This document shows positions 7,361 through 63,785 of a stretch of DNA of 64,000 nucleotides, piece after piece. The translations under genes and the position numbers were made by a program. The stretch is from the IMG/VR virus record IMGVR_UViG_3300030329_004647, positions 62,001-126,000 of that record. One strand, 5' to 3'. The number at the start of each line of letters is the position of its first letter. Position 1 is the first letter of the stretch. Below the pieces are notes generated by a model, which did not search any database, was not told where the DNA came from, and saw only the letters and a program-made list of their open reading frames with translations.

Positions 7361-8008
7361 ATGAAAATTATACTAACAGAAACGGAGCTAATTAATGTTA
7401 TAACAAAAGTTATGATTGAACAGGCAAATGAATCCCCAACTCACGGGATTCAAGAAGATAGTATGAATAAGTTAAAAAAACATATTAGTATCTATTTTTT
7501 ATATCTCAATAGCATGTCTGACCTGGAAGCATACTGGCAGTCAATACAAGACGAAGGAGCTTTAACAGTTTATCTATATGGTAGAGAAAATCCAATTAAA
7601 ACAGATTTACATAGTGGTTTAAAGATTGCAGGTTTGGACAACCCCTTAAATGATAGAGGTAACAGAATGGATGCAAACACAGTTATATACACCCTGTTAA
7701 CAAATTATTTCCATAATGGAGGTAAAAATTGGAAAAGAGGTGATAATATAGAGTTGGTTCCAGCTTATTCCCACTCAGTAGACGTTACATTTGAAGAAGA
7801 TGTTGTTGAGTACGGTACAGTATTTTTGGATATATACACACCAACAGTAGAAAAAGCTCAAGAACTGGCATTAGGTCCTGACAATTATAACTTTGAAGTA
7901 GACCGACAAACTGATGACCATGATTATACTGGAGACCGTAGAAATCAGGAAATAACAGACCTACAAACTAATAAACACGAGTTAACTCCACAAATGTTTG
8001 GTTTTTAA
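7361..8008 (+). CDS. hypothetical protein with class B leader (MKIILTETELINVITKVMIEQ)
   Basis: Leader; closely follows the upstream ORF. Confidence 0.75.
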   Translation: MKIILTETELINVITKVMIEQANESPTHGIQEDSMNKLKKHISIYFLYLNSMSDLEAYWQSIQDEGALTVYLYGRENPIKTDLHSGLKIAGLDNPLNDRGNRMDANTVIYTLLTNYFHNGGKNWKRGDNIELVPAYSHSVDVTFEEDVVEYGTVFLDIYTPTVEKAQELALGPDNYNFEVDRQTDDHDYTGDRRNQEITDLQTNKHELTPQMFGF

Positions 8009-8601
8009 TGAAAATTTTAGAATCTGAAAAATATAGAATTAAAAAACTTTACAATATTTTAGAACAGACTGAAAAGGGTAGGTACTACCAAATGTTAACA
8101 CCCGAAATACAAAAAGCTTTAAAAGATTTATATGACAGATATGGTATAGATATAAAAGACAGTCATCTACAAAAAGAATTTGAACAAGAAGGACAATACA
8201 GAGAAGATGCTGGAGGAGTAAATCCTTATGCTAAAGAAGCTGTAGACCAACTAGTTAAAGACGCTCAAGAAAAATTTCCCAACATCCCTGAAGTACAAAA
8301 GGGTATTTTGTCGGGTTATAGAAGTTATGATAGACAAGTAGATAATTTTGGTAAAAAAGCTAAAAAAAGAGGTATAGAAGATACCCAGAAATATAACACC
8401 ATACCTGGATTTTCTGAACATCACACAGGTAAAGCGTTTGATATTTTTAGTCTAACTGATAGTTTTTGGAACAACAATCCAGATGTTAAAGATTGGGTTG
8501 CTGAAAACGCTGGTATGTATGGGTTTAATGTAACTTATAGTGCAGAAGGAACTCTACGAATGGAAGAACCATGGCATTTATATTATTATGGAATGGATTA
8601 A
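8008..8601 (+). CDS. M15 family (VanY-like) D,D-carboxypeptidase / cell-wall peptidase with class A leader
   Basis: SGYRSYDRQ, PGFSEHHTGKAFD (SxHxxGxAxD) and EEPWH motifs. Confidence 0.85.
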   Translation: MKILESEKYRIKKLYNILEQTEKGRYYQMLTPEIQKALKDLYDRYGIDIKDSHLQKEFEQEGQYREDAGGVNPYAKEAVDQLVKDAQEKFPNIPEVQKGILSGYRSYDRQVDNFGKKAKKRGIEDTQKYNTIPGFSEHHTGKAFDIFSLTDSFWNNNPDVKDWVAENAGMYGFNVTYSAEGTLRMEEPWHLYYYGMD

Positions 8602-10876: not shown

Positions 10877-11203
10877 ATGGCAAAAAAAATTACATTAACA
10901 GAAAATGAATTAATAGCACTTATAGAAAAAGTGGTTAAAGAACAAGTACAAGGTGAAGACCCAATTCTAAAATGTATTAATGAAACTATGAGAAACGCTA
11001 ATCTAGGTGAAATATCAGAGTTTCCAAAACCATGTATCACAGCTTTAGTAGCAATACAAAAGGGTGACCAATCACCATTAGAACTAATGCAACTTGGAGC
11101 TCAGTGTATGTCTGAAATGGATGGTGATGACTGGAAAAAAGTACAAGATAAAGGTGCAGAGGTTATGGAATGTATTAAGATTCACGGTACAATAGCGTAT
11201 TAA
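10877..11203 (+). CDS. Cys-containing hypothetical protein with class B leader (MAKKITLTENELIALIEKVVKEQ)
   Basis: Leader; TATTTATA at 10852-10859. Confidence 0.8.
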   Translation: MAKKITLTENELIALIEKVVKEQVQGEDPILKCINETMRNANLGEISEFPKPCITALVAIQKGDQSPLELMQLGAQCMSEMDGDDWKKVQDKGAEVMECIKIHGTIAY

Positions 11204-11643: not shown

Positions 11644-11756
11644 AATGAAACCTACATTTAAAGAAGTAAAAGAATTAATGAAGACAATTATTAAGTCTAA
11701 TGTAGAAGAGGTTGTAATAGAAAAACCTAAATTTAAATTTCGAATAAAAAAATAAA

Positions 11757-12464
11757 CTAGTCCAAAGAAATTATATCACTAATTTTTTTACCACTACCTA
11801 CAATAGTGTACGGTTTTAAAGAACTATTACCACTACTACCTTTTATTCCCTTATATTGTAAAACAATACCGTTATTGTACATTTTATTATGTGTTGTAAA
11901 AGGTTCATCCATAAAATGATAACACCCGTCGGATGTGACCTTAACGGTTACATCATTTCCTTTATACTTTCTACTTAAAAACAACTCATCTACCTCTAAC
12001 TTTGAACATAATTCAACAATTCTAGGGTCACCATCCGTACTTTCTAACTTATTTACCAAATTTCTACGATTTTCTAAGTTTTCATTAGTACCACTTTGTG
12101 TTAATGAAGAAATTTTTGTGATTTTTACTCCAGGAATTCTATTTAAAGAGTTTAACCCCCTTGTTACACACGTATAAAAAGATGATTTACCTATTTTGTC
12201 GGTATTAAACCACTCATTTCTATCATAACGAAATAAATGAAAGAAAGAATGACATATAGATTCGATGATTTGAGCTGGATTTTCCACACCTTCTATAGAA
12301 ATTTCCCATACACTTGTCATTTCATACTTAATAGGACCATTTGTATTGGTTAATTCTTTTTCTCGTTGGGTGTAATCCTTTGTTAAACCTATTTTTACAT
12401 CATTTGAGATAAAATTTTCATCTGTTTGGTGAAAATACTCACCAGTGTATATATATTTTTTCAT
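11757..12464 (-). CDS. GIY-YIG / T5orf172-like domain protein
   Basis: KIGLTKDYTQREKELTNTNGP...YEMTSVWEI...IESICHSFF...NEWF pattern. Confidence 0.7.
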   Translation of the reverse strand: MKKYIYTGEYFHQTDENFISNDVKIGLTKDYTQREKELTNTNGPIKYEMTSVWEISIEGVENPAQIIESICHSFFHLFRYDRNEWFNTDKIGKSSFYTCVTRGLNSLNRIPGVKITKISSLTQSGTNENLENRRNLVNKLESTDGDPRIVELCSKLEVDELFLSRKYKGNDVTVKVTSDGCYHFMDEPFTTHNKMYNNGIVLQYKGIKGSSGNSSLKPYTIVGSGKKISDIISLD

Positions 12465-16997: not shown

Positions 16998-17294
16998 ATG
17001 ATACTAACACAAAAAGAAAAAAATAGAATTAGAAAATTACATAAAGAACAGTCTATTGTTAAAGAAGCAACTGCGTCTGATAATAGTGGAAGTTATGAAG
17101 CTCCATTAACACATGAAAGAGAACACGATTTAGTGGGGATAGAGGTAATAGACACAGCACCTACTATTGATGTGGTTAGTATAGTCGATGATAGTGACGA
17201 AGGATTGGAAATTGATTTAGATAGTTTATTTGACGAACTAGCTATGTTTAATGTTGAGGACGACTCTAGTGATTTTTTTCCAGAAGACCTTTAG
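16998..17294 (+). CDS. acidic hypothetical protein with class A leader (MILTQKEKNRIRKLH...VKEA)
   Basis: Leader motif. Confidence 0.75.
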   Translation: MILTQKEKNRIRKLHKEQSIVKEATASDNSGSYEAPLTHEREHDLVGIEVIDTAPTIDVVSIVDDSDEGLEIDLDSLFDELAMFNVEDDSSDFFPEDL

Positions 17295-24139: not shown

Positions 24140-26836
24140 ATGCTTAACGAACAATATAATAGAATAAAATATCTCATGGGTTATGATACCTCAAAACCCT
24201 TAACAGAACAAGCAAAAATCTTAAACACTCTACTACTAACAGAAAGTGTAAATTTTGGTACCTTCCTTAAAGGTCCGATACAGGTAATGATAAGGGAATG
24301 GGTAGGAGGATTAATGGGTGCCTTTGAAAAAGAAGTAATAGAAAAAATGGCGAAAGAACTAGGTTCTTCAGAAGCTGTAATAAGAAATTCTTTACGTAAA
24401 GCTGCGGGAGACGCAACACTAAACCCAATGGATATAAAAGTCGTATTTACTTTCGCTAGAACAGCGGGACCTAGGACAGCGGGGTTAAAAGGATTTGAAC
24501 GAGGTGCACGAGAAGCTTTTAATGATATAAACCAAGTTTTTAAAACTGGAAATATGAATGTGGCAATGAAAGAAGCTTTGGAAGTATTAGAAAACACACT
24601 AGGAAAGGAAAATATGAACTGGATGGCAGGTGGAAGTGGAAAATGGAACGGCCACCCTATGAAAAAAATGTTAGATGAGTTTAGACAGAAAAAAATCAAT
24701 ACAGACCAAAAAGTCGACGTTGATGATGGTGGTGGTAACGTTAAACCAGATGTAGACGGTAAAGTTAAAACAGATGTAGACGGTAAAACAGTATACAAAC
24801 CATCACAACGAAAACCAAAAGATGTGTTTGAAGAAGAAACAGGTCTTAAGTGGAATGAAACCTTATCCTCAAGTGCAGAGGGAGTAAAGAATAAAGGAGG
24901 GTATAACAACTTAAATACTAGTTTAAATAAAGAATCAGCAAAAGTATCACAGGTAGCTGGTTCAGGTAAATTATGGGATATATTTAAACACTCACCAGGT
25001 AACCAAGGACTAACGAAGGGTGAGGTAAAAACTATTACTAATGGAACTAAAGGTTCCAACAACTATCTAAAACAAGTGATGGAAGAAGGGTTCCCACCAA
25101 CAAAGGCACCTTATGAGGGTTATACTGGTCCTTTAAGACAATGGAATGAGTCCACGAATAGTTGGGCTAAACCAGAATATTCATCATCAGATATAGTAAA
25201 TATGTTATCTAGAAGATGGCAACAAAAACAAATATCTAGTAATAGCTTTATACAAAGCATGAAGAACAAATGGACTAAAACCATTTCAAATTTTAAAAAC
25301 GCTTCTATTGGTGGTAAATTTAGACAAATAGTTGATACAGCTCTATTAGTATTTAACACAGCCATGTTAAAAACCAATCCTATTACCAAAGTAATAATGT
25401 ATGGATTAACATGGGGAGCTTTTAGAGGTCTTAATTCTAAAATACTCAAGGGAACAATTAAAATTAGAGCTAGATATGTGATAGCTGCATATAATGTTAT
25501 GAGTCTAGCTGGGGCGTTAGATGGGTTTGATAATCTACTCACAAATATTAAGGCTCTTTTAGATGATATACCAGGTAAACGTAAAGTTGCTTTTACTGAA
25601 AATTTATACTTAAATGTACTTACCCCTGATTTTTATAGTAAATTGGTAGGTCAGAAAAGTGAAATGGAGTCTATTGTTGGTACACCAGAAGAACACGCTG
25701 CTGTAGCAAAACAAATAGCGGAAATAATATATAACGGTTCACTTAATGGTGTAACATTTTTAACTGAAAACGGATTTACACTTAAAGATATAGGGGAGAG
25801 GATAGGAAACCAATGGCCTACAAACTGTACAGTAGCTTTTGCAAGTGGTGTAGCACACCAGTTTAAAAGAGAATGGCAAAGACTAGATGGTGAAGAAAGA
25901 GAAATGTACGACGTGTTTGAACAAGTTCAAAAATTAGAATGGTGGAAAGGTCAGTCGTCTGAATATGATAAGCAATTGTTGACTAAGCTTGGTGCTATAG
26001 ATTTTCCTAGTTGGGATGACCTTGCACCAACCATTAAAAACTGGGACCTTATTGGAACGGATGTAGATGAAATTTTAGTTACAGCACAAAACGCGTATCA
26101 AACAGGAGACATTACACAACAATTAGAAAATGAGTTAAAAAAGATTGCTGAAAATGAAAAAGTACAAATGACAGCTGATTATATACAAATATACGAAACT
26201 CTAATTAGGGATTACTATGGAATGTCGTTAGAACAAAGTGACGTGACTGAAGATGAATTTATACAGAGAAAAACCAACCAACAACAGGCCATTTTCAAAT
26301 TAAGAGAATTTTTATTTGGGCCTTATATAAATTTTGGTTTTCCACTAAAATCTGAAGAAACACCATATATGTTATTTTTACCAGCAACTTGGCAAACAAT
26401 ATCACAAGGAAAAGGAGGTAAAGAATTACAAACCGATGCTTTAGATAAAAACATACAAGTTACCAGAGTTACCGACAAACCTGATAAAATTACTTTAGGG
26501 TTAAGATTGAGTGCGAGTGCTAAGGTAAATAAAATGGACCATTTACAAAGAATAAATGATGCAAAAAATAAATTTATTGGTGGTGAAAGTTACTACGACA
26601 ACTTACCATCAAAAATACAAGGATATATTTTACCAGAATTAAAAAAAGAAACAGGATTAGACAATCCTTTATTATATTTAATGGCCGCTTTAGAATCTAC
26701 CTCAAGGGAAAAAAGAAACCCACGAAATAAAATACAATTTGAAAAAAGACGTGGATATATAATAACACCCAATCCAGTTATACCAACTCAAGTTGAAGAA
26801 TCTAAAATAATTGGTTTAGCAAAATTATTACAATAA
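24140..26836 (+). CDS. large hypothetical protein with class A leader, probable internal virion protein
   Basis: MLNEQYNRIKYLMGYDTSKPLTEQ...LLTES; TATTTATA at 24118-24125. Confidence 0.8.
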   Translation: MLNEQYNRIKYLMGYDTSKPLTEQAKILNTLLLTESVNFGTFLKGPIQVMIREWVGGLMGAFEKEVIEKMAKELGSSEAVIRNSLRKAAGDATLNPMDIKVVFTFARTAGPRTAGLKGFERGAREAFNDINQVFKTGNMNVAMKEALEVLENTLGKENMNWMAGGSGKWNGHPMKKMLDEFRQKKINTDQKVDVDDGGGNVKPDVDGKVKTDVDGKTVYKPSQRKPKDVFEEETGLKWNETLSSSAEGVKNKGGYNNLNTSLNKESAKVSQVAGSGKLWDIFKHSPGNQGLTKGEVKTITNGTKGSNNYLKQVMEEGFPPTKAPYEGYTGPLRQWNESTNSWAKPEYSSSDIVNMLSRRWQQKQISSNSFIQSMKNKWTKTISNFKNASIGGKFRQIVDTALLVFNTAMLKTNPITKVIMYGLTWGAFRGLNSKILKGTIKIRARYVIAAYNVMSLAGALDGFDNLLTNIKALLDDIPGKRKVAFTENLYLNVLTPDFYSKLVGQKSEMESIVGTPEEHAAVAKQIAEIIYNGSLNGVTFLTENGFTLKDIGERIGNQWPTNCTVAFASGVAHQFKREWQRLDGEEREMYDVFEQVQKLEWWKGQSSEYDKQLLTKLGAIDFPSWDDLAPTIKNWDLIGTDVDEILVTAQNAYQTGDITQQLENELKKIAENEKVQMTADYIQIYETLIRDYYGMSLEQSDVTEDEFIQRKTNQQQAIFKLREFLFGPYINFGFPLKSEETPYMLFLPATWQTISQGKGGKELQTDALDKNIQVTRVTDKPDKITLGLRLSASAKVNKMDHLQRINDAKNKFIGGESYYDNLPSKIQGYILPELKKETGLDNPLLYLMAALESTSREKRNPRNKIQFEKRRGYIITPNPVIPTQVEESKIIGLAKLLQ

Positions 26837-33970: not shown

Positions 33971-34777
33971 ATGAAATTTATGATTAAAGAAGAGATAAAT
34001 AGAATTAAAAATTTAATGTTAGTTAATGAAGAAAATGAGATGGGTCAATATATGGATTCCACATATCTTAAAACATCCGAACAAGCAGGGATAGGAGATG
34101 AAGAAACAGAAGTAATTGTATTTAACACAATTAAAGATGCTATAGAACATAATATGAAATTAGTGATGTTAAGACCAGAATATGTTGAAGTAGCTCGTAA
34201 CCTTATAGATAGTGAAGGAGCAAATGTTTTAGTGGGTACGGTTATAGATTTTCCATATGGGAACGGTAGTGTAACTGATAAAGTACAAGAAGCTAAACAA
34301 GCTGTAAATAATGGAGCAGATGAATTAGATTTTGTAATAGATTATAGAGCTTATTTAAGAGGAAATGTAGAAAAAGTTAGTAGAGAGATTAAAGAAGGTT
34401 CTGAAATTGGATTAAAAAATGGAAAAACAGTAAAATGGATTTTAGAGACTGCAGCCTTAACTGAAGACCAAATAGGGGAATTAACTTCTATAATTAGAGA
34501 TGTGATTATTGACAATTTTGGTGAAGGTGAAGCCGCAAATGTTTTTGTAAAAACATCTACAGGATTTTTTACACCAGAAGGGGGTGGTCCTGGAGGAGCT
34601 ACTGAAGAAGCGGTATCTATTATGACAAATAACGCAGGTCCCTTAAAGGTTAAAGCATCTGGTGGTATTTATAGTCAGGACGATTTGAAAAAAATGGTGG
34701 GAGCTGGAGCAAGTCGTATAGGTACTTCAGCAGCTAAAGAAATAATGTTAGGTCAAAAAACAGAAAAGGATTATTAA
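33971..34777 (+). CDS. deoC: deoxyribose-phosphate aldolase with class A leader
   Basis: MDSTYLK, VGTVIDFPYG, GADELDFVI, KWILET, FVKTSTG (Schiff-base Lys), KASGGI, RIGTS. Confidence 0.93.
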   Translation: MKFMIKEEINRIKNLMLVNEENEMGQYMDSTYLKTSEQAGIGDEETEVIVFNTIKDAIEHNMKLVMLRPEYVEVARNLIDSEGANVLVGTVIDFPYGNGSVTDKVQEAKQAVNNGADELDFVIDYRAYLRGNVEKVSREIKEGSEIGLKNGKTVKWILETAALTEDQIGELTSIIRDVIIDNFGEGEAANVFVKTSTGFFTPEGGGPGGATEEAVSIMTNNAGPLKVKASGGIYSQDDLKKMVGAGASRIGTSAAKEIMLGQKTEKDY

Positions 34778-54601: not shown

Positions 54602-55303
54602 ATGAAGATTTTAGGACCCAAAGATATTGGCCACGGATTATTAATAGAATATGATGCTGGACATCTCTCACCACAAGACAATGTTAAAGTAATTAAAGAG
54701 ATGAAAAACTCTGAGTTTTCTGATGAAGTGTATATGTATTGTATCTTACAAAAATATGGAACACCAAATAGAAACGGGAGAGTATACCCAAAAAGAATAT
54801 TAGAAAGAGAAAATGATAGATACCAAGACGTTATTAAAAGAGGAAGTGCTATTTCCGAACTAAACCACCCAGAATCTTCACTAATTGATTTAGAAAGAAC
54901 TTCTCATGTTATCACAGAAACTTTTTGGGATGGTAACAAACTAATGGGAAGACTAAAATTGTTAACAACTCCAGGATACCACCAAAAAGGAATAGTATCA
55001 TCTATGGGGGATATCGCAGCTAATTTATTAAGACAAGGAATCACTTTAGGTATTTCATCTAGAGGAGTTGGTTCACTAAAGAAAAGCGGAGAACACAATG
55101 AGGTACAAGATGATTTTGAATTGATATGTTTTGACCTTGTTTCATCACCATCTACACCAGGCTCTTATCTATTTAAAGACATGAGTGAAGTTGATAATTA
55201 TGATGAAGTATTAGAGACCGTAAAAGAAAAAGATTCATTCGACTCAAAAATAGATAGGTCGCTTTCTCTAATGGATAGATTAGATAACTTTCTTAATCAT
55301 TAA
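54602..55303 (+). CDS. prohead core protease (T4 gp21-like)
   Basis: NRNGRVYP, ELNHP (catalytic His), GISSRGVG (catalytic Ser), DLVSSPS; ATG 54602 preferred over the track's TTG 54587. Confidence 0.93.
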   Translation: MKILGPKDIGHGLLIEYDAGHLSPQDNVKVIKEMKNSEFSDEVYMYCILQKYGTPNRNGRVYPKRILERENDRYQDVIKRGSAISELNHPESSLIDLERTSHVITETFWDGNKLMGRLKLLTTPGYHQKGIVSSMGDIAANLLRQGITLGISSRGVGSLKKSGEHNEVQDDFELICFDLVSSPSTPGSYLFKDMSEVDNYDEVLETVKEKDSFDSKIDRSLSLMDRLDNFLNH

Positions 55304-55401: not shown

Positions 55402-56823
55402 ATGTCAAAAGAATCTTTAATAGAACAAGCACTGCTCGAGGCTGAACAGTTGGAAAATACTATGAGGTCTAACGCAAAAGAAATACTTGCTTCAACAATG
55501 AAGGAAGAAATTGGAGAGTTAGTACAAGAATCGTTAGCTGAGAAAGACGATTACCTTAAGGAGCAAACAGAAGAGGACATTGAAGACGAGACTTTAGATT
55601 TTGAAGGGTCAGATGATGACGCTGAAGAAATGGAAATGTCTGTCGAAATTCCTGATTTAGAAGATGAGATGGAGGACGATGAACTCGCACCTCTTGATTT
55701 AACCTCAGCAACTGACGACGAAGTCATAAAAGTATTTAAAGCCATGGGTGATGAAGATGGTATCATTGTTAAAAAAGACGAAGATGAAATTTCATTACAA
55801 GATGGTGAAGATGAGTACTTAATAAAATTAGAAGAAAACAAAAATATGAAAACAAAAAAATCTAATTTAAAAGAAATGGAAAAAGAAATGGAAGTTGACG
55901 AATTAATGATGGATGAGGAATCACCAGAAACTGATGAAACAACTGAAATGGAAGAAGAAGTTATGTATGAAATCGAATTATCTGATGAAGATGAGGATAA
56001 ATCAGAAGAAACTAAAGAAGACGCACACGAAGAAGAGATGGAAGAAGGTCACATGCACCACAAATTTAAGCAAGGTTACGACGCTAGACAAGATGACTCA
56101 CTGGGAGATTTAGATGGACCAGAAAGTAGTTATTCACAATCTTTTGCAGACCGTAGACGTGAAAGAGAAGGTATGAGAAAATCTGCCAGAAGAACTCCAG
56201 ACATGTTAAACGCGGGTAAAAAAGAAGTGGGTGAAATGGTTCGCCAAAATAACCTAGGTCAAAAAGTCCATGCTGGTAACAGAAGTAATTCTTACAACAA
56301 AGCTGCTAGAAAAAAATCTGGAATTCATTTACCAGAATCTAGAAGAAAGAAAGCTAGAATTTCTGAAAGAGCTAGAAAGGTTGCACAAAAATCTTCAGTA
56401 TCTAAAAACTACGGTCAACTTAAAGAAGAAATTACTGGATTAAAATCTAAGAATTTTGAATATAAGAAGGCTTTATCGTCATTTAGGGACAAATTAAACG
56501 AGGTAGGAGTATTCAATTCCAACTTAGCTTACGCAACTAGATTGTTCACTGAACATTCTACAACTAAACAGGAGAAGATTAATATTCTTAAAAGATTTGA
56601 CAACGTCCAATCTTTAAAAGAATCTAAATCACTCTATAAGGTAATCAAAGAGGAGTTATCGACTGTTAAATCTCCGAAAACTAAAAAAACAATTTCGGAA
56701 GCAGTTGAAAAACGAATCAACAAATCCCCAAGAAGCGGAAGTAAGAGTAAACTAACTGAAAGTAAAGTTTACGAAAACCCACAATTCTCAAGGATTAAAG
56801 ACTTAATTAATAAAATAAACTAA
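55402..56823 (+). CDS. prohead core / scaffold protein (T4 gp22-like)
   Basis: Position between protease and MCP; acidic coiled coil with many [LI]-x-E sites; LNEVGVFNSNLAYATRLF. Confidence 0.8.
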   Translation: MSKESLIEQALLEAEQLENTMRSNAKEILASTMKEEIGELVQESLAEKDDYLKEQTEEDIEDETLDFEGSDDDAEEMEMSVEIPDLEDEMEDDELAPLDLTSATDDEVIKVFKAMGDEDGIIVKKDEDEISLQDGEDEYLIKLEENKNMKTKKSNLKEMEKEMEVDELMMDEESPETDETTEMEEEVMYEIELSDEDEDKSEETKEDAHEEEMEEGHMHHKFKQGYDARQDDSLGDLDGPESSYSQSFADRRREREGMRKSARRTPDMLNAGKKEVGEMVRQNNLGQKVHAGNRSNSYNKAARKKSGIHLPESRRKKARISERARKVAQKSSVSKNYGQLKEEITGLKSKNFEYKKALSSFRDKLNEVGVFNSNLAYATRLFTEHSTTKQEKINILKRFDNVQSLKESKSLYKVIKEELSTVKSPKTKKTISEAVEKRINKSPRSGSKSKLTESKVYENPQFSRIKDLINKIN

Positions 56824-56837
56824 AAAAATAAAAAAAC

Positions 56838-58670
56838 ATGGGAGCATTATTAGAATCCGGAATGGTTGGTAACATTGGGTTAAAACACCTAAAAGTTATC
56901 AAAGAGGATACAATTAATAAATGGGACAAATTAGGTTTCCTTGATGGCCTTAAAGGTCATGGAAGAGAAAACATTGCTCAGCTTTTTGAAAATCAGGCAA
57001 CTCATTTAATCAATGAGGCGACTGCAGCTGACAACTCAGGTTCTTTCGAAACTGTAGTTTTCCCTATTATTAGAAGAGTATTCTCAAAATTATTAGCTAA
57101 CGAAATCGTATCTGTACAGGCAATGAACTTACCAATTGGTAAATTATTCTACTTCGTACCAAAAGTATCAAGTAGAGTTGGTGAGGGTGGTATGTATGAA
57201 GGTTTCGCTCCATTTGGAGCACCAGGTGCACCGGCAACACAAACGCCAAGTTCACCTACATCAGCTACAACAATAAACTTATATGACAACTTCTACGCAA
57301 CTAACGCACCAATGGGTGCTGAAGATGGTCTTTATGACATCTCAAAAGGTTCGTACTCAGGTTATATCACAACTAATCTACAAGTTATGGACTGGAACGC
57401 TTCAGCTCGTACTTTAGGTTATGCTGCGACTAACTCTACAACTGTAACGTCATTAACATCAACAACTGATTGTTTAAAATCTGTGATTATTGGAGTTACT
57501 GGATTCCAGTCAACAGGTGAAGGTAAATTAATCGGACCGATGGGTAACGAAATAGATACTGAAGATTTCTTATCTTCTTTAACTTTAATTACTGAAAACG
57601 CTACAACTTGTAAGTCAGGTTCAACTAACTATAACGCTGGTGACAACATGTTATTCAGAGTTGTTACTCAAAAATACGGTAGGTCAATTGCGAACCCAAC
57701 AAGTTCGAAAACATCTACAGCTTTCCCTGGTGGAGACTTTGACAGTATTTGTGATGTAACAGGTACAATTTACTTAGAGGCTGACCTTTCGTGTCCAGCT
57801 TGTATTAATTGTGACTCTGTAGACGGATATGTTTGTTCATACTACGCAAATCGTGAGTTCCAAAATGAAACATCACCATTTAGTGCAGCGTGGAGAGTTT
57901 ACAAAGACCTAGAATTTGAAGAAAAAATGGGTGAAGTTTCTTTCGACCTTGAATCTGTTACAGTTTCGGTTACTGAAAGAAAATTAAGAGCTCAATGGTC
58001 ACCAGAGCTTGCACAAGACGTGTCAGCATTCCATAATATCGACGCTGAAGCTGAGTTAACTGCTTTACTTTCTGAAGAAGTTGCTGCTGAAATCGATAGA
58101 GAAATCTTAAGAGACCTTAGAAAAGGAGCAGCTTGGGATTTAAGATGGGATTACAATGGATGGAAGAGATTCCAATCAGGTCAAGCACCATATACTCAAA
58201 AAGACTGGAATCAAACGTTAATCACTGCGGTTAACCAAATTTCAGCTCAGATTCACAAATCTACATTGAGAGGTGGAGCTAACTGGATTGTTTGTTCTTC
58301 TGAGGTATCTGCAATATTTGATGACTTGGAGTACTTCCACGTGTCAAATGCAGCACCAGACCAAGACCAATACAACATGGGTATTGAAAAAGTTGGAACT
58401 CTAGGAGGTAGATATACTGTATATAGAGACCCTTATTTCCCACCTAACCAATTATTACTTGGTCACAAGGGAACGTCATTACTTGACACAGGGTATGTTT
58501 ACGCACCGTATGTACCGTTACAATTAACACCAACAATGTATAATCCATTTAACTTTACACCAATCAAGGGTATCATGACTAGATACGCTAAGAAAATGGT
58601 TAACAACCGTTTCTATGGTAGAGTTACTATCGATGGAGTTAAAACATTCGATGTTAAAGAGTTAAGATAA
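56838..58670 (+). CDS. major capsid protein (T4 gp23-like)
   Basis: IVSVQAMNLP, RKLRAQWSPELAQD, EIDREILRDL, YAPYVPL, GIMTRY. Confidence 0.96.
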   Translation: MGALLESGMVGNIGLKHLKVIKEDTINKWDKLGFLDGLKGHGRENIAQLFENQATHLINEATAADNSGSFETVVFPIIRRVFSKLLANEIVSVQAMNLPIGKLFYFVPKVSSRVGEGGMYEGFAPFGAPGAPATQTPSSPTSATTINLYDNFYATNAPMGAEDGLYDISKGSYSGYITTNLQVMDWNASARTLGYAATNSTTVTSLTSTTDCLKSVIIGVTGFQSTGEGKLIGPMGNEIDTEDFLSSLTLITENATTCKSGSTNYNAGDNMLFRVVTQKYGRSIANPTSSKTSTAFPGGDFDSICDVTGTIYLEADLSCPACINCDSVDGYVCSYYANREFQNETSPFSAAWRVYKDLEFEEKMGEVSFDLESVTVSVTERKLRAQWSPELAQDVSAFHNIDAEAELTALLSEEVAAEIDREILRDLRKGAAWDLRWDYNGWKRFQSGQAPYTQKDWNQTLITAVNQISAQIHKSTLRGGANWIVCSSEVSAIFDDLEYFHVSNAAPDQDQYNMGIEKVGTLGGRYTVYRDPYFPPNQLLLGHKGTSLLDTGYVYAPYVPLQLTPTMYNPFNFTPIKGIMTRYAKKMVNNRFYGRVTIDGVKTFDVKELR

Positions 58671-58691: not shown

Positions 58692-58720
58692 AAAAACCCC
58701 TCTTCGGAGGGGTTTTTTTT
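58692..58720 (+). terminator. intrinsic terminator after MCP
   Basis: AAAAACCCCTC-TTCG-GAGGGGTTTTTTTT. Confidence 0.93.
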
Positions 58721-58759
58721 ATGCATCTTAAAGTATTTATATTAAAAGAACTTAAAATT

Positions 58760-61327
58760 ATGCCACAATTTAATATATCATCCGAAGAAAGGAATAGAAT
58801 TAGAGGTTTACACATTACAGAATCTAAAGATAAAAGAATCACTTCAGTCTTAAATGAAGCTAAGGCTTTAGAAGGTTGGTTCGGAAAAATGTTTGGTGGG
58901 AAAAAAAGAAAAGAAGACATATACAACATTCTTAAAGCCGGTGTACAAATTGGTAGTCCCCCACTCTATTTAGAAGATAGAAAAGAAAACCCTCCATATT
59001 ATACTGAAGAAGAAATTAAAAGATTCGCTAATTTCATGAATAAGTTAGATAGAGTTTTTGTTAATGAAAAAAAGGTAATAGAACTATTAAGAACAGGTGT
59101 GGGATTAGGACTAGAGGAATTGGATATATTAACAAGGATTTTATACGCGTCATCTACTGACCCAGAAAAACCACAAAATTTTACTGACGTGTTGGTGGCA
59201 TCAGGAGCATTTAATGAAAGAGAAAGTTACAATCTAGATAGAATATTAGATACTAATCTATCAGATTTAATGAAAAAAACAAAAAAACAAGATATTAAGA
59301 AACGAGACTGTATCGATACAAATCCATTTGATAAAGAGAATGAACCAAGAGAGTGGGCATGGTGTGACAACAAACTTAACCCAGAGGGTGATGTGCAAGA
59401 AACAGAAGATAGTTACGATTATCAGTTAAGTGAAGTTAATAGAATACGCGAGATAATGGGCCTTAAAATATTGACGGAACAAAAAGTAGGTAGTGTTATT
59501 ATGGTAGATGGGAGAGAAATGGAAGTTGTAGATTATATAAAACAAGAATTACCACCAATAAACGTAGGACAACAATTTGGGTCTGGACTGTATAATGTGA
59601 GTGGTGAGGTTAAAAAATCTTTAGATGGTCTAGTTAATAAAATGAAAAATTTCTTTAATAGAAAAGAAGTACAGGGAATAGTTTTTGATATAGACCTAGA
59701 AGGTGGAGCTTCACTAGTTCCAATCTCAGATGCGTTAGCAAGAAAATACGGTATAAGTACTAGTCTGTCTGATGCAGATAGAAATAAGTGGTTAGCTGGA
59801 AAAAGAGCTTCAGAAGTTAAAAAATATTTGGAAGCACAATTAGGTCAACTAGGAAACGTACAAATACCAGAACCAACAGTTACATTAGGTACAACAAAAT
59901 GGGATAAAAATAAAGGAGTTAATCACAAAGACTATACAGAAGAACAGTTTATGAATATTACTGTTAAAGCTGCGGGTAAAAGACAAGTATTAGAGGCTTT
60001 ACCAGCATTCTGTGAAAAAGGATTTGAACCAGAACAGGGAGGATTAGGTGACCCAAAAAGAGCATATAAGGTTTATAAAGGAAGAGGAAAAAAATTAAAT
60101 TTAGGTGCGGGAGAAGGTAAAATATGTTTATCATTTGACGCATTAACCGTTCCAGATATGTTTGAATTAACCTATAACGGAAAAACATATAGAAGTATGA
60201 ACTCAAAGACAGGTAAAGCTGGATTCATATCAGGTAAGTATGATGAGATATCTGAAGAAGAGTTAGATAAATTTACAGCTATGTTACCCGAAATACAAGA
60301 TGAAATAGCTAAATTAACTGGTGATATACAATTAGCACAAGACGCTTTAGAGTCTGTAGGGCCTGAACAAGAAGCAAAATTAGAAGAAATACTCCTAAAA
60401 CAACAAGAAGAATTAGAAAAAAGTATAGAAGATACCAACAGAAAAATGAAAAAGTATGGGTATAACTTATCAATACCAGTAAAAAATCATAGAAGTAGAA
60501 AAAAATGGGATGATTATATTATGCATTATGGCGACCCTAATACAGGATACCCAAATGCTGTAACACCTAATTGGTATTGGGAAGAAGGTCAATATACGAT
60601 AGATGACACTCCTTTCGCTGGACCTGGTAGTGATAAAAGACCCGAAGAATTTTTTAATATGGCCGACGAAGGAGAAGTAAATGGTGAGTGGTTTAATCGT
60701 TTCTTTAACAAATATAGATATGATAACTCTAAAAAAATTAAAAGAAGTACAGGGTTTAAAACATTGTGGGCAAATAGACCAACTAATAAAGATTGGAAAA
60801 AAGATGATGTTGCAGCCTTTTTCCTTGGTATGAGAAGATTAGAAAAACAACTATTTAGAAATCAAGACGCAAAAAGAGACGAACTAGCTAAGTCTATTAA
60901 AAAAATGAAAAGAGATTACGAAAATAGAATTGAAAACTTATCTAGTAATATTGAAAAAGAAACTCGAAGATTACAAAATGAGTTAAATAAAAATATTAAA
61001 ACACTTAATGATTCTAAAGGAGAAGCTGAACTGTCTAAGAAAATGACAGAGTATAAACTAAGAACAGGTACTAAAGGAATGTACAAGTTTGATGAGTTAT
61101 TAAAAGAAATATTAGCTGATTCGTACGGTGGTAGAAAAAATGTTCCAGATATTATAGGACCTAAAGGTACTATTACTTTTGATAAAGTATTAGGGAAAAA
61201 TGAAGCTTATCTACAAGTTATAGCTCCTATAGGTGGTACATTATGGGCGGTACAAGTAGGTTGTGGTGACAAATGTAAGGGATTAGTTGATAATCCAGTT
61301 ACATATGATAGGGGAACACAAGCTTAA
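58760..61327 (+). CDS. large protein with two class A leaders and an OmpA-like domain
   Basis: MPQFNISSEERNRIRGLHITES; internal LSEVNRIREIMGLKILTEQ; FGSG...IDLEGGAS...NKWLAGKRASEVKKYL. ATG 58760 preferred over 58721. Confidence 0.75.
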   Translation: MPQFNISSEERNRIRGLHITESKDKRITSVLNEAKALEGWFGKMFGGKKRKEDIYNILKAGVQIGSPPLYLEDRKENPPYYTEEEIKRFANFMNKLDRVFVNEKKVIELLRTGVGLGLEELDILTRILYASSTDPEKPQNFTDVLVASGAFNERESYNLDRILDTNLSDLMKKTKKQDIKKRDCIDTNPFDKENEPREWAWCDNKLNPEGDVQETEDSYDYQLSEVNRIREIMGLKILTEQKVGSVIMVDGREMEVVDYIKQELPPINVGQQFGSGLYNVSGEVKKSLDGLVNKMKNFFNRKEVQGIVFDIDLEGGASLVPISDALARKYGISTSLSDADRNKWLAGKRASEVKKYLEAQLGQLGNVQIPEPTVTLGTTKWDKNKGVNHKDYTEEQFMNITVKAAGKRQVLEALPAFCEKGFEPEQGGLGDPKRAYKVYKGRGKKLNLGAGEGKICLSFDALTVPDMFELTYNGKTYRSMNSKTGKAGFISGKYDEISEEELDKFTAMLPEIQDEIAKLTGDIQLAQDALESVGPEQEAKLEEILLKQQEELEKSIEDTNRKMKKYGYNLSIPVKNHRSRKKWDDYIMHYGDPNTGYPNAVTPNWYWEEGQYTIDDTPFAGPGSDKRPEEFFNMADEGEVNGEWFNRFFNKYRYDNSKKIKRSTGFKTLWANRPTNKDWKKDDVAAFFLGMRRLEKQLFRNQDAKRDELAKSIKKMKRDYENRIENLSSNIEKETRRLQNELNKNIKTLNDSKGEAELSKKMTEYKLRTGTKGMYKFDELLKEILADSYGGRKNVPDIIGPKGTITFDKVLGKNEAYLQVIAPIGGTLWAVQVGCGDKCKGLVDNPVTYDRGTQA

Positions 61328-61851
61328 GGGTGAACCAAAATTAATACAGGGTAAGATGTTTGAGCGTAACGTGCTTGAATTACACTAACCGCTCCAATCG
61401 TTAAATTTCCACGACCCTCCAAATCAAATAACATAGCTTTTCTATGTCCTGGAGAATTAATCCAGTCATTAACTACTTGACGACATTCCTTTTCTAAATC
61501 AAGAGGCTCGTCAGTCCATGAATACAAAGGCAATCCAGCCATACATTCGGTACCCCAAGAATATGTACCACAATATTTTTTAATTCTCATTTGAGGGTCA
61601 TTTATTTCTTCATGTCCTTTTACATCAACAGTTTCACTATGTGAAAAATTTACTTCTTTATATGTCATGTAACTTGCGTGGTGATAAGCAGCTTTATAAG
61701 CGTCATTAGACCACTCTACGGCCTCCAAACCCTGTGATACCCTATATTCGTTTACCATTCTAAAAATAATTTGTTCTGCCTCACCTATACGTTGTTGTCC
61801 GTAAGAAGTAAAAGTTAAAATAGTAAGTAAGATTGTTATTAGTTTTTTCAT
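61324..61851 (-). CDS. secreted CAP (SCP-like) domain protein
   Basis: Signal peptide; IFRMVNEYRVSQGL, HHASYM, FSH, WINSPGHRKAML. Confidence 0.88.
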   Translation of the reverse strand: MKKLITILLTILTFTSYGQQRIGEAEQIIFRMVNEYRVSQGLEAVEWSNDAYKAAYHHASYMTYKEVNFSHSETVDVKGHEEINDPQMRIKKYCGTYSWGTECMAGLPLYSWTDEPLDLEKECRQVVNDWINSPGHRKAMLFDLEGRGNLTIGAVSVIQARYAQTSYPVLILVHP

Positions 61852-61944: not shown

Positions 61945-63204
61945 ATGAAGAGTAATTTATTATCTGAAATTAATCGTTTAAGGGGCATTATGGGTTTAAA
62001 GTTAATCCAAGAACAAGTCCAGTCACCACCTTATGACCTATATACCCAATGGGAAGGTTCTGGTGGAAAAGTTATAACATCTAAGGAATGGAGTGATAAA
62101 AAAATATTTAAAGCAGGTTTTATAAATTACATAGGTCCTTTTGGAGATAGAGGTTATGTTGTTTTAATGCCTGGTACAAAATATGTAGATGGAATTGGTG
62201 AGATATCTTCACCTGTTGTAAATTCTAAATACCCTCCTATCGGAGGAAATGTGGACAACCAATTATTTAAAATAGAAGATAGAAAATTTAGACCTGGTCA
62301 AAATAAAGTGTATGGGGGTGATTTGAAGTGGGCTGAAGGAAACCCACAAATTGACTTTATGAAATATCAAAATAACGATTTATGGGAGTTAGGCAGTCAA
62401 GCTAAAGCTTTACAATCTGATATGAATAGAGGTGGTGGTCAGACTAAAACTAGATTTCATTTTTTAGCTTACTCTCAAAGAACTAATGGTAACTTAAGAA
62501 TTCTAAACATAAATATTAGATTAAAAAACATAAAAGAATTAGAAGCAGAGGGTAAAACAGACAATACAAAAAAAGGTACTTTAAGCATTAACAATTATGT
62601 AAAACAACGTGGTGGTAATGCATGGCACTTAGAATATGGTTCAGCACCGTTAGCGACTTATGGACCTGGAAACATTAGTATAGAGGAAGATTTACCAGAA
62701 TTTGTTACCGACGAATACCAGTTTGATGCTGGTGAAAATTTTGATTTCGATTCTGCAGTTCTAACTCAATTAGCTAAAGACGCCATCAAAGAAAAAATTA
62801 TTGACGCTATAAATGAATTAGGAGAATATAAAAGTGCTTATTTAAAAGAATTAGGTAAAAAACCCGTAATAATCACAGCTTACTCTTCTATCGACGCAGA
62901 TTCTGAAACACCAGGTGGTGGTGGTGATTTTGGACCATGTCAAAGTATTAAAAAATCAGGAAAACGAAAAGATTATAATAAATGCCTTAGTCAATATAGA
63001 GCTAATACAGTTGTAAAACATCTCCAAGATAATTATTCGGATATATTTGGTAATGTTAAATTAAAAGGTATTGGAGGTGGTGAAAACCCATCTAAAAATA
63101 GTTGGAAACCAGGAAAAAAGAATCATGACTCTAAAACAACCCAAAAAGACCGTAAGTTTACAATTAAATTACCAGGATTTACTATACGAAGAAAAGTAGG
63201 TTAA
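61945..63204 (+). CDS. OmpA-like C-terminal domain protein with class A leader
   Basis: LLSEINRLRGIMGLKLIQEQ; FDFDSAVL...ITAYSSID...YNKCLSQYRANTVVKHL...GGGE...DRKFTI. Confidence 0.85.
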   Translation: MKSNLLSEINRLRGIMGLKLIQEQVQSPPYDLYTQWEGSGGKVITSKEWSDKKIFKAGFINYIGPFGDRGYVVLMPGTKYVDGIGEISSPVVNSKYPPIGGNVDNQLFKIEDRKFRPGQNKVYGGDLKWAEGNPQIDFMKYQNNDLWELGSQAKALQSDMNRGGGQTKTRFHFLAYSQRTNGNLRILNINIRLKNIKELEAEGKTDNTKKGTLSINNYVKQRGGNAWHLEYGSAPLATYGPGNISIEEDLPEFVTDEYQFDAGENFDFDSAVLTQLAKDAIKEKIIDAINELGEYKSAYLKELGKKPVIITAYSSIDADSETPGGGGDFGPCQSIKKSGKRKDYNKCLSQYRANTVVKHLQDNYSDIFGNVKLKGIGGGENPSKNSWKPGKKNHDSKTTQKDRKFTIKLPGFTIRRKVG

Positions 63205-63785
63205 TAAATGTAATTTCTTGATATTTGAAAGGAAGAGTATATAGCAAGATGTGTTTTACCCTTCCATGTGAATAAACCTAACTGAGTAGACCCAGAACCA
63301 ATACCCACAATACCATCCCCAACAGAAGCCCAGTTTTTTATGATAATTTGGTGCCCAGGAGAGTTGTCCCAAGAGTTAACTAAATAAGTAGCTAAGTCTT
63401 GGTAAGTGACAAATCTTTCAGAGGACACACATGTTAACATACTTACTTCTGAATATGCATCAACTTCATACTTTAATGTTTTATTTTGGTATTGTGATTG
63501 TATCTCATCATATACATCTACACTTATTTTATTTAATATATGTTTACCTTCAGGATGCCCAGCAGTTTGTTGTTCCACTAAAACACCTGTAATGTATGTA
63601 GATAAATTGTCGTGTAAAACATCAGAATAAACTAACTTTGGATTTCCGTACGATTCACGATAATCATTAATTTCTACAAATACTAAACTATCTATAAGTT
63701 CAGCATTAAAATTATTATAATCAATTACCTGTGAATAGGTTGTTAGTGTTATAAGAGTTAGTAATAATGTAATTAATTTTTTCAT
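63201..63785 (-). CDS. secreted CAP (SCP-like) domain protein, paralog of 61324..61851
   Basis: Near-identical signal peptide MKKLITLLLT...YSQ; INDYRESYG; WDNSPGH. Confidence 0.8.
   Translation of the reverse strand: MKKLITLLLTLITLTTYSQVIDYNNFNAELIDSLVFVEINDYRESYGNPKLVYSDVLHDNLSTYITGVLVEQQTAGHPEGKHILNKISVDVYDEIQSQYQNKTLKYEVDAYSEVSMLTCVSSERFVTYQDLATYLVNSWDNSPGHQIIIKNWASVGDGIVGIGSGSTQLGLFTWKGKTHLAIYSSFQISRNYIY

What the first reader, a model, noticed from the sequence alone, without database searches (positions are those of the whole stretch)
59426..59482. Second, internal copy of the class A leader inside the 58760 ORF
Seen in sequence: LSEVNRIREIMGLKILTEQ sits about 220 aa into the protein and closely matches the N-terminal LLSEINRLRGIMGLKLIQEQ of the 61945 paralog. 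An OmpA-like domain follows in both. Inference: an upstream leader-bearing gene fused to a formerly independent leader-OmpA gene. This is direct evidence that the leader moves as a module and that polyproteins form by fusion.
Basis: partly seen in the sequence, partly recalled or inferred. Interest (0 to 1): 0.6.

Follow-up and report, generated by a model that had tools for sequence, protein, structure and literature searches.

The report
Internal capsid-targeting leader in fused phage protein
A marine T4-like phage has joined two separately tagged proteins into one gene and kept the second tag, a short helix plus a likely head-protease cut site, at the junction, so the fusion is probably cut back into two proteins inside the phage head.

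Summary
Residues 223-241 of the 855-aa ORF 58760-61327 (window 59426-59482) are a second copy of a leader that otherwise sits at the N-terminus of at least 13 ORFs in this 232-kb phage genome.

- **Conservation:** it is the most conserved 19-aa stretch of the protein in six fused orthologues (0.80 against 0.45 overall). It follows a linker whose length varies by 0 to about 190 aa.
- **Structure:** it lies in a low-confidence, flexible segment of the AlphaFold models, outside the OmpA-like fold that starts about 15 residues later (Z 11.8).
- **Split relatives exist:** the C-half occurs alone with the leader at residue 6. The N-half occurs alone and ends where the internal leader would start.
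- **Direction:** rooted trees make the fused state derived and require two to three fusion or fission events.
- **Leader swaps:** orthologous cargo carries different leader classes.
- **Cut site:** every leader copy is followed within 1-10 residues by hydrophobic-x-Glu, the kind of site T4-type head proteases cut. The phage encodes such a protease 4 kb upstream.

Best reading: a capsid-targeting and processing propeptide like T4's CTS, retained at a fusion junction. Cleavage and packaging are inferred, not shown. The 61945 ORF shares only the leader and a distantly related OmpA-like domain.

The parts
58760..61327 (+). Fused ORF, 855 aa: N-terminal leader, helical N-half, variable linker, internal leader, OmpA-like domain, coiled-coil and beta-rich C-terminal part
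   Evidence: The start at 58760 is supported over 58721 by three things: orthologue N-termini, the TATTTATA promoter-like motif at 58734, and a terminator hairpin at about 58693-58720 that overlaps the earlier ATG.
58775..58822 (+). N-terminal leader, class B type (aa 6-21), ending in Ile-Thr-Glu
   Evidence: Low-confidence helix 8-21 in the full-length model.
58892..59374 (+). N-half: folded all-helical domain (aa 45-205), function unknown
   Evidence: pLDDT 69-94. It occurs as a stand-alone gene in relatives (P0015, P0021). No Pfam, PHROG or Atlas match.
59375..59425 (+). Acidic linker (aa 206-222). Orthologues carry 0 to about 190 extra residues here.
   Evidence: Alignments. pLDDT below 50 from residue 210.
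59426..59482 (+). Internal leader (aa 223-241): short amphipathic helix, then an extended stretch ending Leu238-Thr239-Glu240 | Gln241. The predicted protease cut lies between 59479 and 59480.
   Evidence: Ten of 19 positions are invariant in 5 orthologues. It is the most conserved 19-aa window (rank 1 of 837). No start codon or promoter motif lies upstream.
59522..59977 (+). OmpA-C-like (MotB/Pal-type) peptidoglycan-binding fold, aa 255-406
   Evidence: The motif Asn342..Leu345..Arg349 is conserved; Leu345 and Arg349 are invariant in 51 sequences.
59978..61324 (+). Rest of the C-half (aa 407-855): beta domain, two long helical hairpins, C-terminal beta domain. Function unknown.
   Evidence: Parts of it recur in many large metagenomic proteins.
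61945..63204 (+). Second leader-bearing ORF (419 aa). The class A leader is aa 5-24 (61957-62016). A weak OmpA-like domain is at aa 266-386 (62740-63102).
54602..55303 (+). T4-type prohead serine protease (Peptidase_S77), the proposed processing enzyme
   Evidence: Pfam E 4.4e-25 and PHROG head maturation protease E 6e-44. The ATG at 54602 follows the promoter-like motif.
55402..56823 (+). Acidic scaffold-like protein between protease and capsid gene. It has hydrophobic-x-Glu-Gln sites at residues 8 and 54.
   Evidence: Assignment rests on position and composition only; there is no family hit.
56838..58670 (+). gp23-like major capsid protein. Predicted maturation cut after Ile-Asn-Glu60.
   Evidence: Pfam Gp23 E 5e-71 and T4 capsid structures E 1e-25. 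The cut site is inferred from the motif and from small leader proteins that continue with the same post-cut sequence.
61324..61851 (-). Convergent gene for a signal-peptide-bearing CAP/SCP-domain protein. It is a conserved neighbour of the leader-OmpA genes.
   Evidence: Pfam CAP E 1e-10. The same arrangement appears in L001, L002, L004, L005 and next to the distant P0089.

Best explanation
The leader is a portable head-targeting and processing propeptide. It works like the capsid targeting sequence of T4 internal proteins but belongs to a different, longer sequence family.

It has two elements. The first is a short amphipathic helix (consensus Glu-x-Asn-Arg-Ile-Arg-x-Ile/Leu-Met/His-Gly-Leu), which is inferred to dock the protein to the scaffold core or the protease. 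The second is a hydrophobic-x-Glu site 1-10 residues downstream, usually followed by Gln, which is inferred to be cut by the phage's S77 prohead protease.

The 855-aa ORF arose when a leader-bearing gene for a helical protein fused to a leader-bearing gene for an OmpA-like peptidoglycan-binding protein. The second leader was kept intact at the junction.

Inside the prohead the fusion would be cut after Glu21 and after Glu240. That would release the same two mature proteins that split relatives make from two genes. Fused and split arrangements would then be functionally equivalent, which explains why they interconvert.

The cargo has cell-wall-binding and cell-wall-cutting domains but no secretion signal. 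It would reach the next host's periplasm by ejection from the virion.

Shown: the sequence, its conservation, its position outside folded domains, the fusion history, the presence of the protease, and the motif statistics. Inferred: packaging, cleavage and ejection.
For: 1. The phage has a T4-type head module: S77 protease, scaffold-like protein and gp23-like capsid protein at 54.6-58.7 kb.

2. All 13 core-motif leader copies in the genome are followed by [Leu/Ile/Val]-x-Glu. Twelve lie 3-10 residues after the core, where the background chance is 0.148. The thirteenth has Leu-His-Glu at the core's end; I read that one from the printed sequence, because the script missed it. The spacer length varies, so it is the site that is conserved and not merely inherited sequence. 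In the orthologues P3 is always Leu, Ile or Val, P2 is free, and Glu240 and Gln241 are invariant. In T4's CTS, targeting maps to residues 4 and 7 and processing to residues 8 and 10. T4 cleavage follows a Glu, and Leu-Ile-Glu fits the cleavage logo (PMC9026906, PMC5694885).

3. The internal leader is the most conserved 19-aa window of the protein (0.80 against 0.45; rank 1 of 837). It lies next to a linker with large indels.

4. Both leaders fall in low-confidence segments that flank well-folded domains: pLDDT below 50 in the full model and 51-70 in the sub-model. The helix spans 216/223-232 and the cut site is in coil. The OmpA-like fold starts at about residue 255.

5. The leader sits on unrelated cargo: a VanY peptidase, a DeoC-like protein, a CarboxypepD_reg domain and OmpA-like domains. 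None has a signal peptide.

6. Split and fused forms both exist, with congruent N-half and C-half trees.

7. Leader genes share the upstream motif TATTTAT[AT] with the protease, scaffold and other structural-module genes. No such motif and no start codon precede the internal copy.

8. A relative that carries the fused gene also encodes an S77 protease.

9. A small leader protein continues after its Glu with the same sequence as the capsid protein's predicted mature N-terminus (E 3e-5).
Against: - There is no proteomic or biochemical evidence for packaging or cleavage.
- No cultured relative carries these proteins.
- The leader shows no sequence similarity to T4's 10-residue CTS and is two to three times longer.
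- Gln at P1' is not known to me as a T4 gp21 preference.
- Hydrophobic-x-Glu is a short motif, at 1.7 sites per 100 aa in this proteome.
- Leader copies are related to each other, so the 13/13 count is not 13 independent trials.
- The promoter-like motif is AT-rich in an AT-rich genome (82 seen against about 63 expected on the + strand).
- The conserved pairing with secreted CAP-domain genes hints at a periplasmic role that need not involve the head.
Confidence: 0.6

Rival explanations
1. The leader is a docking helix that recruits many different proteins to a common virion or assembly partner, but the internal copy is not cut. On this reading the fusion stays intact as a two-headed protein, and Glu-Gln belongs to the binding motif.
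For: The helix is more conserved than a cut site alone would need. The N-terminal leader should already be enough for targeting. No cleavage data exist.
Against: In all copies the invariant part extends through hydrophobic-x-Glu-Gln, while the spacer between helix and site varies from 1 to 10 residues. That pattern fits two separable elements. Free interconversion of fused and split forms is easier to explain if both give the same products.
Confidence: 0.2
2. The leader tags proteins for a role in the infected cell's envelope, for example delivering cell-wall-binding and cell-wall-cutting proteins during lysis or superinfection exclusion, together with the neighbouring secreted CAP-domain proteins. 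On this reading the head is not involved.
For: The cargo is cell-wall directed: OmpA-like domains and VanY. Convergent CAP genes with signal peptides are conserved neighbours even for distant family members.
Against: The leader is charged and amphipathic and has no hydrophobic core or lipobox, so it is not a Sec, Tat or lipoprotein signal (read from the sequences). Some cargo is not envelope related, such as the DeoC-like protein. The genes share the head genes' upstream motif. The trailing site resembles a T4-type protease site.
Confidence: 0.12
3. The internal copy is a functionless relic of the fusion, or an artefact such as an assembly error or a missed second gene start.
For: Fusions do leave relics. 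One database entry uses a different start (P0003, 868 aa).
Against: The copy is the best-conserved stretch of the protein across orthologues about 45% identical overall. Six further independent assemblies carry the same fused architecture. The frame is open throughout. The codon before the leader is not a start codon, and no promoter-like motif lies upstream.
Confidence: 0.03

Closest known systems
Capsid targeting sequence (CTS) of phage T4 internal proteins IPI-III and Alt, removed by prohead protease gp21
   Same: It is a short N-terminal tag on unrelated cargo. It has a bipartite logic, with targeting residues followed by a hydrophobic-x-Glu processing site (PMC9026906). The phage has the same type of protease (S77) and a T4-like head module. 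The cargo differs between related phages.
   Different: There is no sequence similarity. The leader is about 20-30 residues with a conserved helix, against 10 residues in T4. It comes in several interchangeable classes. Gln dominates at P1'. Here a copy is internal, at a natural fusion junction. Nothing has been tested experimentally.
Long, multiply cleaved N-terminal propeptides of head and ejection proteins in giant phages (phiKZ, 201phi2-1, SPN3US)
   Same: Head proteins are cut after Glu at a short motif by a gp21-related protease. Propeptides of 111-254 residues are cut at several sites (PMC10052503, PMC5694885). On that model, residues 1-240 of this ORF could act as one long propeptide.
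   Different: Here the N-half is a well-folded domain that also exists as an independent leader-bearing gene. It therefore looks like cargo and not a disposable propeptide. The junction carries a full second leader, not just a cut motif. The protease is S77, not S80.
OmpA C-terminal-like / MotB / Pal peptidoglycan-binding domains (PF00691)
   Same: The fold matches (Z 11.8, rmsd 2.5 A), as does the Asn-x-x-Leu-x-x-x-Arg-Ala motif.
   Different: The domain is phage-encoded, has no signal peptide or membrane anchor, scores below Pfam's cut-off, and is fused to a leader and to coiled-coil and beta domains.

Membership tests
T4-type capsid targeting sequence / protease-removed head propeptide | Sits at the N-terminus of the precursor | tested here: met
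   In this genome 12 of the 13 copies with the core motif start within 25 residues of the start codon. Among the 139 collected proteins there are 39 N-terminal matches, and internal matches occur only in this fused family.
T4-type capsid targeting sequence / protease-removed head propeptide | Ends in the prohead protease site (hydrophobic-x-Glu) | tested here: met
   Thirteen of 13 copies have the site: twelve at 3-10 residues (background 0.148) and one read by eye at the core's end. Glu240 and Gln241 are invariant in orthologues.
T4-type capsid targeting sequence / protease-removed head propeptide | Phage encodes a gp21-type protease and a scaffold core | tested here: met
   Peptidase_S77 E 4e-25, with an adjacent acidic scaffold-like ORF and a gp23-like capsid gene. 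The relative G001 also has S77.
T4-type capsid targeting sequence / protease-removed head propeptide | Carried by unrelated cargo proteins | tested here: met
   VanY, DeoC-like, CarboxypepD_reg, OmpA-like and unknown folds. Pairwise similarity is confined to the leader.
T4-type capsid targeting sequence / protease-removed head propeptide | About 10 residues, related in sequence to the IPIII CTS | tested here: not met
   The leader plus site spans about 19-30 residues, against 10 in T4 (PMC9026906). No T4 sequence was compared with a tool. The consensus differs from the T4 CTS as I recall it.
T4-type capsid targeting sequence / protease-removed head propeptide | Directs packaging into the head and is removed there | not testable with these tools
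   This needs virion proteomics or reporter fusions. The protease-leader complex prediction gave no verdict.
OmpA C-terminal-like domain (PF00691) | OmpA/MotB/Pal fold | tested here: met
   58760 ORF: the Foldseek top 50 are all of this family, and VIA gives Z 11.8. The fold of the 61945 ORF was not modelled.
OmpA C-terminal-like domain (PF00691) | Score above Pfam's curated cut-off | tested here: not met
   58760 ORF: no hit. 61945 ORF: 16.7 bits against a cut-off of 27.2. Nine of 10 family members hit weakly.
OmpA C-terminal-like domain (PF00691) | Conserved Asn..Leu..Arg-Ala peptidoglycan-binding motif | tested here: met
   Asn342, Leu345 and Arg349 are invariant in orthologues. Leu and Arg are invariant in 51 sequences. 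Binding itself was not tested.
Viral polyprotein (one translation product cut into several mature proteins) | Cleavage at internal sites by a virus protease, yielding separate functional products | not testable with these tools
   This is inferred from the conserved internal site and from both halves existing as separate genes.

The most novel reading that the evidence does not exclude
Marine T4-like phages of Bacteroidota-type hosts use a previously undescribed, multi-class family of plug-and-play capsid-targeting leaders. These load cell-wall-binding and cell-wall-cutting proteins, and other enzymes, into the head for ejection. Because the head protease removes the leader, genes carrying it can fuse and split freely. 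This ORF would then be a natural tandem-leader polyprotein caught in that process.
Probability: 0.45. Interest if true: 0.7.

Novelty: new variant of a known kind. Interest (0 to 1): 0.6.

Why it matters
If the leader is a capsid-targeting and processing tag, then a single sequence motif identifies the ejected-protein repertoire of a large, uncultured group of marine phages. That repertoire is at least 13 genes in this genome, and more if the related class C tags count.

The fused/split series gives a natural experiment on how phage polyproteins arise: a cleavable tag at the junction makes fusion neutral.

It also offers a second, longer and sequence-distinct targeting tag for packaging foreign proteins into T4-like heads. 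And it predicts that cell-wall-binding OmpA-like domains are delivered from outside by the virion.

Tried and rejected
- **Cultured phages:** tblastn of the 855-aa and 419-aa proteins, and of two distant family members, against 50,697 cultured phage records found nothing. No published virion proteome can be used.
- **Family scans of the 855-aa protein:** Pfam and PHROGs gave nothing usable. The ESM Atlas feature search of the N-half gave nothing.
- **Complex prediction:** the S77 protease with residues 214-250 returned 'no answer' (score 0.00, after four busy refusals). This is neither support nor evidence against.
- **Profile-profile comparison:** the two OmpA-bearing families aligned only over the leader. 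Their OmpA-like domains are not demonstrably homologous by that test.
- **Internal translation start:** rejected. The codon before the leader is TTA, no ATG, GTG or TTG precedes it in frame nearby, and no promoter-like motif lies upstream.
- **Start at 58721:** rejected in favour of 58760.
- **Leader in the capsid propeptide:** the leader profile did not pick up the capsid protein's own propeptide. The resemblance seen lies mostly after the cut site and is only a hint.
- **Literature:** searches found no description of this leader family in the held library.
Full report
**Setting**

The window is bases 62001-126000 of a single 232,028-bp virus record with 32% G+C. Just upstream of the finding lies a T4-type head module:
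- a Peptidase_S77 prohead protease (54587/54602-55303; Pfam E 4e-25, PHROG E 6e-44);
- an acidic scaffold-like ORF (55402-56823);
- a gp23-like major capsid protein (56838-58670; Pfam E 5e-71; T4 capsid structures E about 1e-25).

The nearest cultured capsid proteins are only 40-45% identical (Flavobacterium phage immuto, Microcystis phage Mel-JY01, an uncultured 484-kb phage). A terminator hairpin follows the capsid gene, and the target ORF starts at 58760.

**The observation**

Window 59426-59482 encodes residues 223-241 of the 855-aa ORF. This stretch matches residues 6-24 of the 61945 ORF at 13 of 19 positions.

It belongs to a leader family found at the N-termini of many ORFs in the genome:
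- window starts 3699, 5319, 5871, 6415, 8008, 16998, 21338, 24140, 33971, 58760 and 61945;
- one ORF at genome position 51752.

The core is Glu-x-(x)-Arg-Ile/Val-Arg/Lys-x-Leu/Ile-His/Met. A profile of these copies finds them at E 6e-7 to 1e-4 in a six-frame scan. The next hit scores E = 2 and is itself an N-terminal variant, at 24140. The internal copy is the only non-N-terminal one.

A third, looser class (for example at 10877, 22958 and 2766) also ends in hydrophobic-x-Glu-Gln.

**The leader is a conserved module, not part of a fold**

- In six fused orthologues that are about 45% identical overall, the internal leader is the best-conserved 19-residue window of the whole protein. Mean pairwise identity is 0.80, rank 1 of 837.
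- The segment just before it carries insertions of 0 to about 190 residues.
- Ten of its 19 positions are invariant in five orthologues, including Glu240 and Gln241.
- AlphaFold2 with a 51-sequence alignment (residues 200-500, mean pLDDT 81) gives a moderate-confidence helix at 216-232. The stretch 233-245, which holds the putative cut site, is coil. The domain beyond it has pLDDT above 95.
- The full-length model (mean pLDDT 78.7) puts residues 1-37 and 210-241 below pLDDT 50. These segments lie between a well-folded helical N-half (45-205) and the next domain.
- That next domain is OmpA/MotB/Pal-like and spans residues about 255-406 (Foldseek top 50; VIA Z 11.8 with 4rha_B; PDB sequence profile hit 6u83_A E 5.6e-4). 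The leader lies outside it.

**Fusion history**

A word-index search and an exhaustive profile search found three architectures.

| Architecture | Proteins | Notes |
|---|---|---|
| Fused, two leaders | Window protein, P0004 (1031 aa), P0006 (939), P0007 (945, on a 210-kb viral contig), P0008 (930), P0009 (815), truncated P0010 | Independent assemblies; P0010's internal copy is diverged |
| C-half alone | P0005 (644), P0011, P0016, P0019, P0031, P0017 and others | Leader starts at residue 6 where the motif was found |
| N-half alone | P0015 (298 aa, on seven contigs), P0021 (371 aa) | P0015 ends where the internal leader would begin |

In the loci of the split forms the two halves are not neighbours.

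A maximum-likelihood tree of the C-module, with the leader columns excluded and rooted on the distant stand-alone proteins, has this shape:
- P0011 and P0012 (stand-alone) are sister to a clade of eight, with support 84/86.
- Seven of those eight are fused.
- P0005 (stand-alone) is nested inside as sister of fused P0004, with support 100/100.

The N-half tree is congruent. P0021 and P0015 (stand-alone) group with P0004 at 95/96.

By inspection of these trees, the fused state is derived, and two (C tree) to three (N tree) changes of state are needed. Fusion happened, and fission or repeated fusion also happened.

**Leader swapping**

Orthologous proteins carry different leader classes:
- The window protein and P0009 start with class B.
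- P0004, P0006 and P0008 start with class A. Of these, P0004 and P0008 keep the Lys-Asp-…-Leu-Asn-Glu segment that follows the leader in the window protein.
- P0011 has class A, but its sister P0012 has class C.

One 10-kb metagenomic locus has six leader-bearing genes in a row.

**Proposed mechanism**

All 13 core-motif copies are followed by Leu/Ile/Val-x-Glu. Twelve lie 3-10 residues after the core, where the chance for a random position in this proteome is 0.148. The thirteenth has Leu-His-Glu at the end of the core, read by eye. The next residue is usually Gln, less often Ser, Ala, Asn, Gly or Glu.

Across orthologues of the internal copy, P3 is always Leu, Ile or Val, P2 varies freely, and P1-P1' is Glu-Gln. 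Genome-wide, hydrophobic-x-Glu-Gln is enriched in the first 40 residues of ORFs (23 seen against 9 expected).

In T4, all internal head proteins join the scaffold core through a short N-terminal capsid targeting sequence. Targeting maps to its N-terminal part and processing to residues 8 and 10. The protease cuts after Glu. The CTS has been proposed as the way T4-like phages load varied proteins into heads (PMC9026906, PMC5694885, PMC3012670).

The present leader has the same logic in a longer, unrelated sequence. Supporting details:
- The cargo includes a VanY-type cell-wall peptidase and OmpA-like cell-wall-binding domains without secretion signals. That makes sense if they are delivered from the virion.
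- Leader genes share an upstream TATTTAT[AT] motif with the protease, scaffold and other structural-module genes.
- The small leader protein at 16998 continues after its Glu with nearly the same sequence as the capsid protein after Ile-Asn-Glu60.
- A relative with the fused gene also has the S77 protease.

If the internal site is cut, fused and split genes give the same mature products. That would explain both the strong conservation of the internal leader and the easy interconversion of architectures.

**What is not shown**

Packaging, cleavage and ejection are all inferred. The complex prediction gave no verdict. No cultured relative or proteome is available. The held literature describes no such leader family, which does not prove that none is published.

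**The 61945 ORF**

Its family (10 sequences) conserves the leader and the Glu-Gln strongly, followed by an indel-rich stretch. It has a weak but consistent OmpA-like C-terminus. It shares nothing else with the 58760 ORF.

**Verdict**

The most likely function is a T4-CTS-like targeting and processing tag retained at a fusion junction. This is a new variant of a known kind, of moderate to good interest.

Noticed in passing
window 61324-61851 (-) and 63201-63785 (-); also L001:7110-7640, L002:12831-13961, L004:3277-3807, L005:8867-10008 and 11692-12168: Each leader-OmpA-like gene is followed by one or two convergent genes for small CAP/SCP-domain proteins with Bacteroidota-style signal peptides. 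The pairing holds even for the distant family member P0089. It may be a functional pair in the cell envelope. The role is unknown.
   Followed up: partly
window 16998-17294 (+); L001:1928-2623: These are small leader-bearing proteins. After the predicted cut, their sequence (Ala-Thr-x-Ser/Ala-x-Asn-x-Gly-Ser-Tyr-Glu) copies the capsid protein's sequence after Ile-Asn-Glu60 (E 3e-5). They may mimic the capsid protein's mature N-arm or its cut site.
   Followed up: partly
window 2742, 3687, 5307, 5847, 6390, 10852, 21323, 22937, 24118, 28797, 33949, 40943, 49011, 53898, 54581, 55354, 58734, 61933 (+): The motif TATTTAT[AT] lies 12-48 nt upstream of the start codons of head-module genes and of nearly all leader-bearing genes. 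Genome-wide, 51 of 82 plus-strand copies precede an ORF of at least 60 aa. It is probably this phage's late promoter. It also points to ATG starts at 54602 and 21338.
   Followed up: partly
window 2766, 10877, 22958, 40970; genome 53336, 57418, 185366: These ORFs show a third, looser N-terminal tag (Lys-Ile/Leu-x-Leu-Thr-Glu-x-x-Leu-x-x-Leu-Ile/Val-Glu-x-Val-Val/Ile-Lys-Glu-Gln and shorter forms). The same class heads many metagenomic OmpA-like proteins of about 270-450 aa.
   Followed up: partly
window 33971-34777 (+) and 8008-8601 (+): A DeoC/LacD-like aldolase-fold protein (Pfam E 1e-9) and a VanY D-Ala-D-Ala carboxypeptidase (E 2e-23) both carry the leader. This implies that enzymes are among the proposed head cargo.
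   Followed up: no
L002:1861-7209, L005:2-3223: Relatives encode very large Cys-rich proteins with a Hint/intein-like domain, about 2.8 kb upstream of the fused gene.
   Followed up: no
L011:6263-7096 (P0121) compared with P0006/P0007/P0008/P0015: A roughly 45-residue module (Gly-Lys-Tyr-Tyr-x-Asn … Asp-Gly-Lys-Tyr) precedes the internal leader in some fused orthologues. In P0121 it sits directly behind an N-terminal leader, which is another sign of domain shuffling in this gene pool.
   Followed up: no
window 58693-58760: A G+C-rich hairpin with a T-run follows the capsid gene. The public protein entry (P0003, 868 aa) starts at the ATG inside that T-run (58721), which is probably 13 codons too early.
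   Followed up: yes
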